DNA from: Stylophora pistillata
Lineage: Eukaryota
NCBI RefSeq assembly: GCF_002571385.2
Contig: NW_019218638.1
Span: forward strand, 27,025 to 91,024
Direction: 5' to 3'
Length of the DNA: 64,000 nt
Under the pieces are notes generated by a model, which did no database searches, had not been told where the DNA came from, and was given only the letters and a program-made list of their open reading frames with translations. Below, piece after piece: positions 12,442 through 17,719 of the stretch. The stretch's first letter is position 1; every line of letters begins with the position of its first letter. A program made the translations under genes and the position numbers.

Positions 12442-12935
12442 TAACTCGAAAAACGTTAACCTAATGTTAAGGTAATTCGGGCACGAAATACAAAAGAGCC
12501 GTTTAAAAATCTTTATCGAAAAAGTATGGCCACGATTTTGAAGCAAATTGAACGCTTTTGAAAGCATTCAATTTTCTGACTCCGGCAAAGCGCGCGGTAT
12601 AAAAGTTCTCACCCTTTCACTTCAAAACAAAACTGAAGTTTACTCGGAAAGGTCCGAAGGCCCTTTGCAGCTAGGAGGTCACGTGCCTAGCAACGCCGAA
12701 TTGGAGAGCAAGCTCTTCTGCGACGACAAATCGAATGAGTGTCTTGAGCATCACGCGTATGTATATCTGAAAGGCGGTTATTTTGAATTCAAGCGGTAAA
12801 TACCATTCCATCTCTCAAAATCCAGTAAGTTTAGCATATAAATATAGCTTTTAGCACATCTTCAAATCGGAAAGGTTAATATTAACTGGGATCGCGGCAA
12901 GAATATCAGCGTCAAGTCGACTACGAGTTACAAAC

Positions 12936-15013
12936 ATGGCTTCTCCTCCAGGTATGTAGAATAGATCTTGTCTTCTTCCTGCACTTTGATAGCGACGTTT
13001 GGACGATTAATACAAGTAAAAAGAAAGAAAATACAGTAATTCACTACGCCTTAGGGTTTAGAAGCTGTTTACTTTTGAAAAACATAGAATTTTGGCTGCT
13101 TATTCCCCTCAAGACTATGGTGTCGGAACCAACAAGCGTTGTTTTCATTGTTGTAGATATCGATATGGACGAGTCAGTTGAACAATCCATTACGGGCAGA
13201 AAAAATTCTGCATACCATTGCTGTGTTCCCCTATGTAATGGGGATTCAAGGTACCACGAAGATTTGCGTTTCCATCGCATTCCCGGTCGTACCAAGGATG
13301 AAAAGTTGAAGAAGGAATGGCTGGTGAAAATCCGAAGAGACGAAGGTCCTGACTTCAAGGTATTTTATAGAGACATTTCGATTTTCAAAGCATTTGGCAA
13401 GGATTTGTTCGGTCAACTTGTGTCTAATGGCTTATAAATTTTCCCATTTAGATAACAACTAGTACGAGAGTATGCTCAAGGCACTTTACCAAGGAAGATT
13501 ACCTTCCCCCCACCAAGTCTGGTAGCCAGCGACTGAAAAGAGGTGCTGTTCCATCGAATTTTAACTGGAATTCCTCCTTCAAAGCACGAAGAAAGATTAT
13601 TCGACATGTCGACAGGTAATATATTCTTTGGTTATGTTTTAATGCATCGTTGAGTTTATGAGGTTACAATGATAAGTCTAGACTAGAATGCTTCTTTCTT
13701 ATTTTTAAATACTGTATCAGTTTTGGATAAATATTAACTGCTATTGAAAGCATTTGTGAAACCTTGTAGAAGGGATGTATGGTTAAAAAGTATATATACA
13801 GACCTCAGGTTCTTCAATTTCTAGAAGGATGTAATTGTTTTAAAATTTAAAATTATGTAAACTATATGAGTATATTAAATTTTTTGGCTTTCTTTGCAGA
13901 GATACTCAAACAGATGATAGTGACACTGATGGAGTGGAAAGTGAAGCAATGCAAAGCAGGGAAAGTGTGGAAACAGAGGTGCAGTCTCTGAAGGCTCAGC
14001 TTCTGGCCATGCATGGAGAGCTTGAGGCGAGCAGAAAGGAAGCAGCTGCAGCTAAAGAAGAGCTAAGAAATGTCAAGGCTAAAGCAACATTAAGTAAATT
14101 TGGTCTGGAGAGATTTGGTCCAGACAACGAGAGTATAAAATTTTACACTGGCTTTCCCACAAATGAACATATTAAGCTTTTTTTTAATTTTATTAAACCC
14201 AGTGCTGAACTAATGACCTACTGTTATGCCTCTGGAGAGAGAGAAAACAGACCAGCCTCCAGAAATATGCTTCTAATAGATGAAATGTTTATGTTTCTTG
14301 TTCGGCTTAAACTTGGATTATTTGAGCAAGATCTTGCTGATAGGTTTGCAATTCATATATCATCAGTCTCTAGAAAATTGGTAACCTGGTCCAATTTTTT
14401 GTATTTTTTTCTTGGAAGTCAAATCATTTGGCCCTCGAGGGCAGATGTAGATAGATGCATGCCTGAGGGTTTCAGAGAACTCTATCCTAGCACCAGAGTG
14501 ATTTTAGACTGCACAGAGATTTTTGTGCAAACACCCACATCCCTGTTGTTACAGTCACAGCTGTACTCATCCTATAAGAGCAACACAACTTTGAAAGGTC
14601 TTATTGGAATCACCCCTCATGGAGCAATATGTTTTGTTTCCACTTTATACACTGGAGGGATTAGCGACAGGGAAATCACAAGATGTAGTGGTATTTTAGA
14701 CCTCTTAGAAGCAGGAGACTCAGTGATGGCAGATAAGGGGTTTGATATAGGTAACATGCTACAGGAGTATAATGTTGAGTTAAACATCCCTCCTTTTCTG
14801 GAAAATCAAGGGCAGTTTTCAACTCAAGATGTGCAAAAAACCAAAACTATTGCAAGCCTTAGAATACATGTAGAACGTGCCATCAGAAGGGTTAAGGAGT
14901 ATCACTTTTTGGATTCCGATGTTCCTCTTTCAACTTTAGGTTCAGTTAACCAGCTCTATTCTATAGCCTGTCTTCTAACAAATTTTCAAGGTCCCTTAAT
15001 CTTATCAAAGTGA
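12936..15013 (+). CDS. THAP + HTH + DDE_Tnp_4 transposase, 498 aa: join(12936-12951,13157-13359,13452-13615,13900-15013)
   Basis: THAP C2CH motif (CCVPLC…W…VCSRHF…GAVP) and catalytic segments ILDCTE, MADKGF, RIHVERAI. All GT-AG junctions are in frame; total 1497 nt. Confidence 0.9.
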
Positions 15014-15564
15014 CAACATTACAATGTAGTGCACTCATTTGGATTAGAAGATCATTCAGAAGGATTAAATATTTAAACTATTACAAAAAGTGTAAGTAGT
15101 CATAATGAGTCTTGGTAAATTTTAATTGTTATTATAAGGTGTCAACTGTTACTGGATATAGTATTTCTGAATCAATTGCTCTTTAAACATAATATTGGAC
15201 ATTTTTGGTGTTTTTCTTTTAAGTTTGGTTAATTGGGGGATTACCACATATATTTAATTCTTGAATTTGAGTATGATGATGCAAGTAAATAACAAAACCT
15301 TGGCTAAAAGAGCTAAAAAATACTAACAAGAAAGTTAGGTCACATTTCTGTTTCTGCAAAAAAATGCTCCATGCATTCCATGGGTCAACATCACCTCATC
15401 CCTCATCCTGACATTATCTGGTTGGCACCAATTTTAGAAAAGTTTTTAAATCTAATATAGTTGTACACAAATTAGAGCAAATATAGAATGGGTTAAAAGA
15501 ATATTGAAGCTAAATCTTTTCATAACAAATACAGTCTTGAGAGTAAGCAAAGACTAGAGGCAAA

Positions 15565-17441
15565 TCAGCTTAGATAGTAATTGAAAAAAAAAATGTCCAC
15601 CTTATCTTTAGCCCCTTGGAAAAAAATGGGATCAAAAAGGATTCTTGTGCAGACAAACATGTCATCATTCATGTAACTGAAAAAATCGCACCAGTCTAGA
15701 CCAGTGAGGCCCAACTGGCACTGGACTTGGTAATAATAAATGTCACTCTTCTTTAAAGAATACTGGTTAGTATTATCCTTGGTAAGATATCTCACATCAT
15801 CAAATGAGGTTGCCCCCTCCCTAACAACTTTAACCTCCAGTAAACCAAAGGGGTTCTGGTCACTACCAAGGGCATCCAAATCATAAACTTTCCGGTCAGG
15901 GCTGCAGCCTAACCATGGGCATTTAGGATTTATAATTAATCCTGATGGGAATAAATTCACTCTGCCATTTTTTGCTACATTAGCATAGACTGTTGCTGCA
16001 TGGGGTTCAAGTTCTACACCCCTCTTCATTGCTGGAGTTTGAACAAATCTTGCCGGGTTCAGCTGACTTACAAGGTTTTCAAAATTTGAAACTCGCCGGG
16101 CAACTGTACCAAACTTGCTTGCTGTTATCCGCTTCTTTCGCAAAAGACGCCAAGTCTCGCTTAAACTTTGAGTAATTGTTTCTTCTTGTACCCTGAGAGA
16201 AATCTCACTTGTGACAGAAAGAGAGTCAAATAGGGCTTGCTGGTTTGCCTCCAGGCACACAGACACATTATTTTGAAATCTATCATTTGCACTCTCAAGT
16301 GGTAAATCTGGAAATGCAGTGCAGGTAAAATCATTTACTAAATAGTCTGCAGACATTTTTTGTTGATAAGAAATCAAACACCCTTTGGGGACATTTCCAA
16401 ATTTGCTTGGGACAAATGAAACAGATCTCAGGTCCTGCTCAGAAGGAACAATGGTTACAAACAGAGGCTTTGGCTGTAGACTGTTAAAATGCTCTTTAGT
16501 CATTGTTCCATATATTGGTGATGGGGAGTACAGGTTGCTTTTGATGTATTTGTTGAAGGATGCGCCTAGCTGAGGCTTCTTCACAAGTACATTTTGAATT
16601 TGCTTTGCTTCAATTTTTTTCCCCCTAGGCACACTCCAGCGCTGCTTCATGCTGGTGCATGTTAGATCATCTGGCAGAGTTCGATGCCCCAGTTGTTTAA
16701 GTAAAGCCAGATAATAGAGAAGCCCTATAACATGATGGCAATACCCTCCTGATCCAGCCACACAAGAGCACCTTCCAGACAAAGAATTATTAGCCATGCT
16801 TGAAGAAACTTCCAAGGAATGAGGTGGCTCGTTCTTCTTCATCGAACGAAAACATTTCGATGCAATTTTCACCGCGTCGTTGGCCCGTATCACTAAAACA
16901 TTAAAACATAAATATAAGATTCTGATTGAGAAAAACAAATAAGAAATACTCGATTTTATTACTGACCTTTAATCTCGTGTAGATATCCAGGTTCTGCCAT
17001 AAACTTGTATGCCTTCGCTGTGCTAGTGCATCCAGACATTTTTTTTGCATATTGGCCGACATCATCGAAGGTCAGCGAGGGAAATATTGAAAGATCTTGG
17101 CTCTCTTCAGCTAAAAAAAGCAATAAAACAAGAACATGAGCAACATAAGTCTAACGATTTGGTAAAAATCTTCAAATTCATACGATCATTAAATTGGGCG
17201 AGTAATATCTCTGTACTTCTAGTGGTGAATTAAACAACTTTGTTGGTTCTATCATCATAGTTTCAGGGGAAATCCATGGCCAAAATTCTATGTTTATCGG
17301 TAGTAAACAGCTCCTAAACTTTTACGTGTAGTGAATTAACGTATTTTCTTTTTCTCTACTTCTATTAATCGTCCACACGTCGCTATCAAAGTGCAGCAAG
17401 AAGACAAGATCTGTAGTCTACATACCTGAAGGAGAGGCCAT
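15565..17441 (-). CDS. SWIM zinc finger + YqaJ (lambda-exonuclease-like) protein, 495 aa: join(17441-17426,17110-16967,16892-15565)
   Basis: SWIM motif CSCVAGSGGYCHH and YqaJ motifs RITASKFG, GVELEP, GCSPD, LEVK, YYYQVQCQL. GT-AG phase-1 junctions are in frame; total 1488 nt. Confidence 0.88.
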
Positions 17442-17719
17442 GTCTGTAACTCGTGGTCGACTTGACGCTGATATTTTTGCCGCGATCCCAGCTGAATATT
17501 GACTTTTCCGATTCGAAGATGTGCTAAATGCTATAATTATATGCTAAGCGTATTGGATTTTGAGAGATGGAAGGGTATTTCACGCTTGAATTCAAAATAA
17601 CTGCCTTTCAGATATGCACACGCAGGACGCTCATGAGACTCATTCGATTTGTTTTGCAGAAAAGCTTGCTCTCCAATTCGGCGTTGCTAGGCACGTGACC
17701 AACTAGCTGCAAAGGGCCT

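What the first reader, a model, noticed from the sequence alone, without database searches (positions are those of the whole stretch)
12658..17719. Transposon whose two TIRs each carry the start codon and first micro-exon of a different gene
Seen in the sequence: the left TIR contains ATG GCT TCT CCT CCA G|gtatg (12936-12951), and the right TIR contains the mirror ATG GCC TCT CCT TCA G|gtatg (17441-17426). The first splices in frame into the THAP-DDE transposase (MASPP-DIDMDE…). The second splices in frame into the SWIM-YqaJ gene (MASPS-AEESQDLSIFPSLTFDDV…). The inverted similarity covers about 280 bp upstream of each ATG and extends about 95 bp into each first intron. Inference: the TIR doubles as a duplicated promoter/5'UTR/first-exon cassette firing inward, which could co-regulate the two convergent genes. 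The ISL2EU gene pair is known; I do not recall this TIR-encoded dual-start design being described.
Basis: partly seen in the sequence, partly recalled or inferred. Interest (0 to 1): 0.85.

Follow-up and report, generated by a model that had tools for sequence, protein, structure and literature searches.

The report
Transposon ends carry shared first exon
A jumping gene in the coral Stylophora pistillata has two 478-base mirror-image ends, and each end supplies the start codon and a 16-base first exon for one of its two inward-facing genes; RNA and related elements confirm this unusual but not revolutionary design.

Summary
Window 12658-17719 is an intact ISL2EU (PHIS) DNA transposon of Stylophora pistillata with about 478-bp terminal inverted repeats (TIRs). 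Each TIR holds, 278 nt from its tip, ATG plus a 16-nt phase-1 micro-exon and a GTATGT donor.

Both splices exist in RNA. The left one (12951>13157) is in Logan contig L041 and equals NCBI isoform P0220 (MASPPDIDMDES). The right one (17426>17110) is in a polyA RNA-seq contig, and the Pocillopora relative reads MASPSAEESQD.

The same design occurs in five transposase lineages that form one supported cluster: this element, the C157 family of the same genome, and three elements from other assemblies. Between families only the terminal ~75 bp and RACATGGC...GGTRNGT stay alignable. In four of the five the transposase has no other in-frame ATG before its THAP domain. Six more distant families in this genome have short TIRs and direct starts.

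In this family, retention of transposase intron 1 is the commoner assembled form; it leaves a 7-codon uORF and later ATGs. The promoter-in-TIR and co-regulation ideas remain inferred, because no transcript 5' ends were available.

The closest analogue is maize MuDR. I rate this a new variant of a known kind.

The parts
12658..13135 (+). Left terminal inverted repeat (~478 bp), terminus AGGCCCTTTGCAG
   Evidence: (blocks I1-I4), alignment, termini
17240..17719 (-). Right terminal inverted repeat, about 87% identical to the left one
12658..12732 (+). Terminal block conserved across families (GGCCCTTTGCAG, TCACGTGC, TAGCAACGCC, CTGG.GAGCAAGC..TCCAG). Likely the transposase recognition part (inferred). 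Mirror copy at about 17645-17719.
   Evidence: cross-family alignment A3
12936..12951 (+). Left micro-exon: ATG + 16 nt (MASPP + 1 nt, phase 1), donor GTATGT at 12952
   Evidence: spliced in RNA contig L041; NCBI isoform P0220
12735..12756 (+). Alternative first exon inside the left TIR (MSVLSIT + 1 nt, phase 1), joined to the same acceptor in NCBI isoform P0225
12952..13156 (+). Transposase intron 1 (205 nt), often retained. When retained, ATG 12936 opens the uORF MASPPGM* and ATG 13117 opens the 506-aa form.
   Evidence: X6 record 15, X11 record 9 contiguous; P0091/L040
13157..13359 (+). Transposase exon 2 (start of the THAP domain)
   Evidence: (THAP), joint 13357/13450
13452..13615 (+). 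Transposase exon 3 (rest of THAP)
   Evidence: joints
13900..15013 (+). Transposase exon 4 (HTH_Tnp_4 + DDE_Tnp_4), stop included
17426..17441 (-). Right micro-exon: ATG + 16 nt (MASPS + 1 nt, phase 1), donor GTATGT
   Evidence: joint 17110/17426 in X6; Pocillopora model P0258
17111..17425 (-). Intron 1 (315 nt) of the SWIM/YqaJ gene; spliced and unspliced forms both present in X6
   Evidence: joint, and record 20 17083-17301
16967..17110 (-). SWIM/YqaJ gene exon 2 (AEESQDLSIFPSLTFDDV...)
15565..16892 (-). SWIM/YqaJ gene exon 3 (SWIM-like CxC..CxH, YqaJ/alkaline exonuclease domain), stop included
   Evidence: (joint 16892/16967)

Best explanation
This is an autonomous ISL2EU (PHIS superfamily) cut-and-paste transposon whose ends have been lengthened into ~478-bp inverted copies of one 5' gene cassette. 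From tip inward each end holds: a ~75-bp terminal block kept across families (probably what the transposase recognises); about 200 nt of 5'UTR or upstream sequence; a start codon in good Kozak context (RACATGGC); a 16-nt phase-1 coding micro-exon; a GT donor; and the first ~185 nt of an intron. On the left the micro-exon splices over 205 nt to the THAP-HTH-DDE transposase. On the right it splices over 315 nt to the SWIM/YqaJ-nuclease gene. Two unrelated proteins therefore begin with the same five TIR-encoded residues, and both are transcribed inward, tail to tail. Shown: the anatomy, both splices in RNA, and conservation in one clade of five lineages. Inferred: the TIR also holds the promoter, so that both genes are expressed independently of the insertion site and in step, as in maize MuDR. 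Also inferred: retention of transposase intron 1, which turns the TIR ATG into a 7-codon uORF, lowers transposase output in this family. The cassette probably arose by inverted duplication of the transposase 5' end onto the other end, after which the second gene took over the copied exon.
For: Anatomy.

Domains.

Left splice: RNA contig L041 carries ...CATGGCTTCTCCTCCAG|ATATCGATATGGAC and has the next two introns removed. It equals the 498-aa protein P0220, listed under NCBI accessions XP_022793346.1 and XP_022808341.1.

Right splice: joint 17110/17426 with GT..AG on the - strand in polyA run X6. The Pocillopora verrucosa model P0258 starts MASPSAEESQD, and Montipora models start MAASQ|GDSQD.

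Sister family C157 (63% and 58% aa identity): each TIR holds a 28-nt phase-1 micro-exon. Both are spliced in RNA contig L067, whose transposase starts MADPSGTSDEPVKKKK, and in L039 and P0021, whose second gene starts MAASLGPSDAVSANL.

Three further elements, L048, L049 and L050, have 411-508-bp TIRs. Each TIR holds a 16-nt phase-1 micro-exon 263-289 nt from the terminus.

There is no in-frame ATG before the THAP domain in C157, L048, L049 or L050.

Across families only the termini and RACATGGC..GGTRNGT align.

The long-TIR families form one cluster (100/98 support) in the DDE tree, apart from six short-TIR families with direct starts.

In the C157-like family, loss of the ATG or 4-nt deletions are seen only in non-autonomous or degraded copies: C239, C2, C1192 and C659.

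The TIR homology in L048 runs to the transposase acceptor plus 9 nt of exon 2, leaving an unused acceptor on the other side.

The MuDR precedent for promoters in TIRs is described in PMC3440606.
Against: No transcription start was mapped. RNA contigs stop at 12685 and 17692, 27 nt inside both termini, where the two TIRs are identical; this is a de Bruijn branch point, not a 5' end. Some contigs run from a flank into a TIR (loose end at 12658, L068), so read-through or DNA carry-over is not excluded.

In this family the intron-1-retained transposase form dominates the assembled contigs: X6 and X11, and most of the listed Logan-only members of P0091's cluster (five are 506 aa and one 505 aa) against the 498-aa form P0220 on two contigs.

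The right splice in this family rests on one contig with 28 nt on its short side, plus homologues. Raw stranded reads (X24) are too shallow over both micro-exons, and most X24 reads over the YqaJ exon come from a variant copy.
Confidence: 0.8

Rival explanations
1. The TIR ATG acts mainly as a short upstream ORF (MASPPGM* on the left, MASPSGM* on the right) in unspliced leaders. The working proteins start at internal ATGs (13117 or 13165; 17039), and the micro-exon isoforms are minor by-products.
For: Intron-1-retained transposase contigs dominate in X6 and X11 and among the listed Logan-only members of P0091's cluster, most of which are 505-506 aa. In-frame ATGs exist at 13117, 13165 and 17039. 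In X6 the unspliced right form has depth 31 against 16 for the spliced form. NCBI also models a Pocillopora protein that starts at MSGC (P0257).
Against: In C157, L048, L049 and L050 the transposase has no in-frame ATG between the upstream stop and the THAP cysteines. C157's second gene has no internal Met before the conserved region either. The conserved residues SQDLSIFPSLTFDDV lie upstream of MSGC and would be lost. The exon phase (1) and the Kozak context are kept in every family. An unspliced leader has at least four upstream ATGs.
Confidence: 0.12
2. The long TIRs are only a relic of an end duplication. Transcription comes from host promoters or read-through, so the TIR has no promoter role and the two genes are not co-regulated, even though the copied exon is used.
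For: No transcription start data exist. Contigs crossing from a flank into a TIR are present (loose end at 12658, L068 and L070). Depth on the sense strands of the two genes differs about 7-fold in X24.
Against: The design has persisted through at least five diverged lineages with 80-98% arm identity. The 5'UTR of every spliced contig lies in TIR sequence. A mobile element whose expression depended on its insertion site would be unlikely to keep two intact genes and identical copies. MuDR shows that such TIR promoters exist.
Confidence: 0.15
3. These are domesticated host genes or an annotation or assembly artefact, not a live transposon.
For: NCBI lists them as ordinary 'uncharacterized protein' loci. 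The two C190 copies are joined across an assembly gap. The window copy's left flank lacks the usual AATA.
Against: There are three 100% identical full copies plus identical partial copies at different loci with different flanks. A contig in X6 shows a flank absent from the copies fetched here. Typical ISL2EU termini, flanks and gene pair are present. The genome holds many related families and non-autonomous derivatives.
Confidence: 0.03

Closest known systems
Canonical ISL2EU elements (PHIS superfamily; Han et al. 2015, PMC4482050)
   Same: THAP-HTH-DDE_Tnp_4 transposase plus a second YqaJ-nuclease gene. TIRs start GG after an A/T-rich palindromic flank (AATA|GG here, against the reported target A|AT|T). 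Restricted to animals. About 4.8-5 kb long.
   Different: TIR lengths reported there are 6-259 bp, and that paper does not mention introns or promoters. Here the TIRs are 411-508 bp and contain the start codon, a coding micro-exon, a donor and part of intron 1 of both genes. More distant ISL2EU families in the same genome have 58-106-bp TIRs, with the ATGs just inside rather than in the repeat.
Maize MuDR (Mutator superfamily)
   Same: Two convergently transcribed genes (mudrA, mudrB). Promoters and transcription starts lie within the ~215-bp TIRs. Convergent overlapping transcripts and intron retention occur (PMC3440606). This is the nearest match for how the element would work.
   Different: The transposase superfamily is unrelated. 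As far as the text read here goes, MuDR's TIRs hold promoters and transcription starts; a shared start codon and spliced coding exon in both TIRs is not described there. Promoter activity is proven for MuDR and only inferred here.
Drosophila P element (from my own knowledge, not checked here)
   Same: A THAP-domain transposase whose binding site overlaps the element's own promoter near the end. Regulated intron retention controls transposase output.
   Different: One gene, short 31-bp TIRs, and the start codon is not in a TIR. Intron retention there concerns the last intron.
PIF/Harbinger two-gene elements
   Same: Sister group in PHIS, with a DDE_Tnp_4 transposase plus a second required gene (PMC9179366).
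   Different: The second gene encodes a Myb/SANT protein. TIRs are usually 25-50 bp, the TSD is 3 bp, and no shared TIR exon is reported.

Membership tests
ISL2EU (PHIS superfamily) | Transposase with DDE_Tnp_4 catalytic domain, HTH and N-terminal THAP | tested here: met
   Pfam: DDE_Tnp_4 4.6e-41, THAP 3.7e-16, HTH_Tnp_4 1.3e-09 on P0220. The same domains are found exon by exon on the window.
ISL2EU (PHIS superfamily) | Second gene with a YqaJ exonuclease domain | tested here: met
   YqaJ 9.1e-13 on window:15568-16938:- and 3.2e-14 on P0258. SWIM is only weak in Pfam (E 0.021, below cut-off), although UniRef names relatives as SWIM-type.
ISL2EU (PHIS superfamily) | TIRs beginning GG, 2-bp TSD within target A|AT|T | tested here: inconclusive
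   Of the 15 termini listed, 11 read AATA|GGCCC, as does the window's right end, which fits the reported target. The window's left flank is CCGAA|GGCCC and a paralogous site diverges at 12659, so no clean TSD exists for this copy. No empty site was found.
ISL2EU (PHIS superfamily) | Multiple copies bounded by the TIRs (mobility) | tested here: met
   Three identical full copies and further identical or diverged ends at other loci.
MuDR-type design (TIR promoters for two convergent genes) | Two genes transcribed convergently from the two ends | tested here: met
   Strand-specific reads and spliced contigs. L067 holds both spliced mRNAs tail to tail.
MuDR-type design (TIR promoters for two convergent genes) | Transcription start and promoter inside each TIR | tested here: inconclusive
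   The 5'UTRs lie in TIR sequence up to 251 nt upstream of the ATG. Contig ends are k-mer branch points, and some contigs include flanks. No CAGE or RACE data.
MuDR-type design (TIR promoters for two convergent genes) | Mutator/MULE transposase | tested here: not met
   The transposase is DDE_Tnp_4 with THAP. The resemblance is in how it works, not in ancestry.

The most novel reading that the evidence does not exclude
Each TIR is a self-contained, portable promoter + Kozak ATG + phase-1 splice-donor module that is also the transposase's binding target. Transposase (THAP) binding would then feed back on both genes at once. Every solo TIR, truncated copy or short non-autonomous copy would be a natural 5'-exon trap able to splice MASPP-type starts onto downstream host exons. 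In two-TIR miniature copies it would drive convergent transcription that yields double-stranded RNA against the family.
Probability: 0.25. Interest if true: 0.7.

Novelty: new variant of a known kind. Interest (0 to 1): 0.55.

Why it matters
It shows a way for a two-gene transposon to keep both genes expressible wherever it lands: copy the whole 5' cassette into both ends, with untranslated leader, start codon, first exon and donor, so that two unrelated proteins share a duplicated first exon.

It extends the known range of ISL2EU TIRs from 259 bp or less to about 500 bp. It also gives a clade-defining structural character.

Three questions become testable in a cnidarian. Do TIRs serve both as recombination sites and as promoters? 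Does intron-1 retention throttle the transposase? Do stray TIRs donate first exons to host genes?

It also explains why NCBI annotates these loci as multi-isoform 'uncharacterized' genes.

Tried and rejected
1. Read laying on four runs did not show the left splice, and I first read this as evidence against it. Contig L041 and NCBI isoform P0220 overturned that reading.

2. Contig 5' ends cannot serve as transcription starts. They sit at mirrored positions where the two TIRs share k-mers (12685 and 17692; in C157-family contig L067, 177 and 175 nt upstream of the two ATGs). L068 and L070 appear to be chimeric paths through a non-autonomous copy's flank.

3. The look-up of encoding contigs found no genomic records for the Montipora and Pocillopora proteins. 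Whether their micro-exons lie in TIRs is therefore untested.

4. Several literature searches found no description of a start codon or first exon inside TIRs of ISL2EU or other eukaryotic two-gene elements. The library is incomplete, and Repbase reports were not searchable.

5. I searched for a paralogous empty site for the window copy. Only the left flank has a paralogue, and it does not continue into the right flank.

6. The bacterial-type promoter scan was not used because it does not apply to an animal.

7. The spliced models were never joined by me. Exons were searched one by one by reference, and the full-length proteins used (P0220, P0258, P0233 and others) are database entries. 
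Full report
**What is there**

Window 12658-17719 (5,062 bp) is bounded by inverted repeats, 12658-13135 and 17240-17719. The repeat finder reports them as four collinear blocks of 82-95% identity. Both repeats start AGGCCCTTTGCAG.

The + strand carries a gene with THAP, HTH_Tnp_4 and DDE_Tnp_4 domains. The - strand carries a gene with a YqaJ/alkaline-exonuclease domain and a SWIM-like CxC..CxH motif. 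The Pfam SWIM match is weak, at E 0.021.

This is the ISL2EU gene pair described by Han et al. 2015 (PMC4482050).

The genome is Stylophora pistillata. It has 398 Mb in 5,513 contigs.

It holds letter for letter. ATGGCTTCTCCTCCAG|GTATGT lies at 12936-12951, and its mirror ATGGCCTCTCCTTCAG|GTATGT at 17441-17426. Each is 278 nt from its terminus.

The repeat continues about 184 nt past each donor (block I1).

**Gene models**

- Transposase: exon 1 at 12936-12951, exon 2 at 13157-13359, exon 3 at 13452-13615, exon 4 at 13900-15013. This gives 498 aa.
- Second gene: exon 1 at 17441-17426, exon 2 at 17110-16967, exon 3 at 16892-15565. This gives 495 aa.
- Both first introns are phase 1.

Exons were searched one at a time by reference, and the full-length proteins I used are database entries.

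**RNA evidence**

I laid four RNA runs on window:12300-18000. The results were:

- Transposase introns 2 and 3 are spliced (13357/13450 and 13612/13897, GT..AG) in raw stranded reads and in two polyA assemblies.
- Intron 2 of the second gene is spliced (16892/16967).
An unspliced form is also present at depth 31.
- The left micro-exon splice did not appear. X6 and X11 contigs run unbroken from 12685 or 12717 to 13357 while lacking the next two introns.

The protein collection settled the left side. The cluster of the 99%-identical hit P0091 holds three NCBI isoforms of this very element:

- P0220, 498 aa, MASPPDIDMDES.
- P0219, 506 aa, MVSEPTS... Intron 1 is retained and translation starts at 13117.
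- P0225, 500 aa, MSVLSITH|IDMDES. An alternative 22-nt first exon at 12735-12756, also inside the TIR, joins the same acceptor.

Logan contig L041 (SRR13196832) maps 12685-12955, then 13155-13359, then on through the other introns. It reads ...CATGGCTTCTCCTCCAG|ATATCGATATGGAC.

So both splices are real. In this family, retention of transposase intron 1 is the commoner assembled state. When the intron is retained, ATG 12936 opens the 7-codon uORF MASPPGM*, and at least four upstream ATGs precede 13117.

**Comparative evidence**

The element has three identical full copies: C850 (the window) and two in C190, which are joined over an assembly gap. Identical left ends lie in C1287, C29 and C926. 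Diverged ends of 87-92% identity lie in C823, C923, C142 and C126. All keep the ATG, the donor and the left acceptor.

Sister family C157 has a transposase exon 63% and a YqaJ exon 58% identical in amino acids. Its TIRs carry a 28-nt phase-1 micro-exon: ATGGCCGATCCTTCGGGAACGAGTGACG|GTGAGT on the transposase side and ATGGCCGCTTCTTTAGGGCCGAGTGACG|GTGAGT on the other side.

RNA contig L067 contains both mRNAs tail to tail and fully spliced. Their N-termini are MADPSGTSDEPVKKKKRGSALHCC and MAASLGPSDAVSANL (also L039 and P0021).

Three further elements come from ENA assemblies of unknown organisms: L048, L049 and L050. Their TIRs are 508, 456 and 411 bp at 96-98% identity. Each TIR holds a 16-nt phase-1 micro-exon, 263-289 nt from an AATA|GGCCCTTTGCAG terminus. 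The encoded starts are MATSQ, MANSG or MANSE, and MATSQ.

In C157, L048, L049 and L050, the reading frame upstream of the THAP cysteines holds no Met. The TIR exon is therefore the only possible start.

NCBI models from Pocillopora (MASPSAEESQD) and Montipora (MAASQ|GDSQD) show the same first exon for the second gene. I could not fetch their genomic context.

Between families only two TIR segments align: the terminal ~75 bp, and RACATGGC...GGTRNGT.

In a tree of the DDE exon, the six long-TIR rows (the five micro-exon lineages plus C125, a near-identical, end-truncated copy of the C157 family) form one cluster with 100/98 support. They stand apart from six families of the same genome that are 42-47% identical, have 58-106-bp TIRs, and have start codons just inside the repeat rather than in it. 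The root was set at the midpoint only.

Among 17 cassette copies of the C157-like family, the ATG is lost or a 4-nt deletion occurs only in non-autonomous or degraded copies. This fits coding constraint rather than a need of the repeat itself. The sample is small.

**Origin (inferred)**

In L048 the repeat runs through transposase intron 1 to its acceptor and 9 nt into exon 2. The other arm keeps that acceptor unused, and the second gene splices 57 nt further in.

In the window, the repeat ends 22 nt before the transposase acceptor, while the other intron runs 130 nt further.

This suggests that the transposase 5' end was copied in inverted orientation onto the far end, and that the second gene adopted the copied exon.

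**How it most likely works**

Shown: two convergent genes each draw 5'UTR, start codon and first exon from a TIR.

Inferred: the promoter lies in the TIR too. The reasons are these:

- The whole 5'UTR seen in spliced contigs is TIR sequence.
- The design has been kept through five lineages.
- MuDR offers a proven precedent of TIR promoters for convergent genes (PMC3440606).

This is not shown. Contig ends at 12685 and 17692 are k-mer branch points, some contigs include flanks, and the raw reads are too shallow.

Co-regulation and a throttling role for intron retention are hypotheses.

**Novelty**

The spliced isoforms are already in NCBI's annotation, and TIR promoters are known from MuDR. I found no paper describing a shared, spliced first exon in both TIRs of ISL2EU or of any other two-gene DNA transposon.

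The TIRs are about twice the longest reported for ISL2EU, which is 259 bp.

I rate it a new variant of a known kind. It is of solid interest to transposon biologists and moderate interest overall.

**Caveats**

- The window copy's left junction is atypical. It reads CCGAA|GG rather than AATA|GG, and a paralogous site diverges at 12659.
- Most X24 reads over the YqaJ exon come from a variant copy.
- The organisms behind L048-L050 are unknown.

Noticed in passing
window:17720-18235: A 516-bp element with 58-bp inverted ends (93% complementary) abuts the transposon's right terminus exactly. Many RNA reads show other copies of it with different neighbours (loose ends at 17720 and 17755).
   Followed up: partly
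window:12440-12657 and G000:C524:154022-154236: The left flank belongs to a dispersed or tandem repeat family. A 93% paralogue follows the window up to 12659 and then diverges. The left junction therefore looks non-canonical, with a possible AG microhomology and no AATA flank.
   Followed up: partly
G000:C190:456290-465902 (L028, L029): Two 100% identical full copies lie head to tail, joined over an 11-N gap. The inner TIRs are cut (only nt 444-503 of one and 107-487 of the other remain). This is probably an assembly join inside the repeat, not a true tandem.
   Followed up: partly
window:12658 (run X6, table 7): One RNA-seq contig enters the left terminus from a flank (...TTCTTACGAAT|A) that matches none of the copies fetched from this assembly. 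This hints at an insertion polymorphism, hence recent activity, or at read-through or DNA carry-over.
   Followed up: no
window:12679-12686 and 17691-17698; L048, L049, L050, L045 termini: A CACGTG E-box-like palindrome (TCACGTGC) sits 22-29 nt from the terminus in all long-TIR families and in some short-TIR ones. It is followed by a CTGG.GAGCAAGC..TCCAG inverted motif. These are candidate transposase or host-factor sites.
   Followed up: no
L021-L025 (C167, C105, C304, C139, C56), TIRs: The short TIRs of the distant ISL2EU families share AAAATGGCGGC / GCCGCCATCTTGG and ACGAGGC motifs. The first resembles a YY1-type site (from memory). In L024 both arms read ATGGC.GCC..(33 nt)|GTAGT, a possible further TIR exon that was not tested.
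   Followed up: no
L038 (G000:C24:687500-696500), around 5950: In the C24 family (250-bp TIRs, 94% identical) the second gene appears to start with a 4-nt exon, ATGG|GTAAGT, about 70 bp inside the TIR, not within it. This may be an intermediate state.
   Followed up: no
window:15013-15565 and beyond: The two genes' transcripts overlap tail to tail. X24 shows sense reads of both strands across 15165-16500, and single contigs hold both mRNAs (L040, L067). This gives natural antisense RNA, as in MuDR.
   Followed up: no
G000:C239:157329-158839, C63, C2, C277 (L042-L045): These are 1.3-1.8-kb non-autonomous copies of the C157-like family, made almost only of two ~480-bp TIRs facing each other. Each still holds, or has recently lost, the ATG-donor cassette.
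   Followed up: partly
window:15349, 16054, 16140, 16478 (table 3): In run X24 between a sixth and three quarters of the reads at these places show another letter (majority at 16140 and 16478). The strongly expressed YqaJ 3' part therefore comes largely from a non-reference copy or allele. Depth falls from 22 to about 1 towards exon 2.
   Followed up: no
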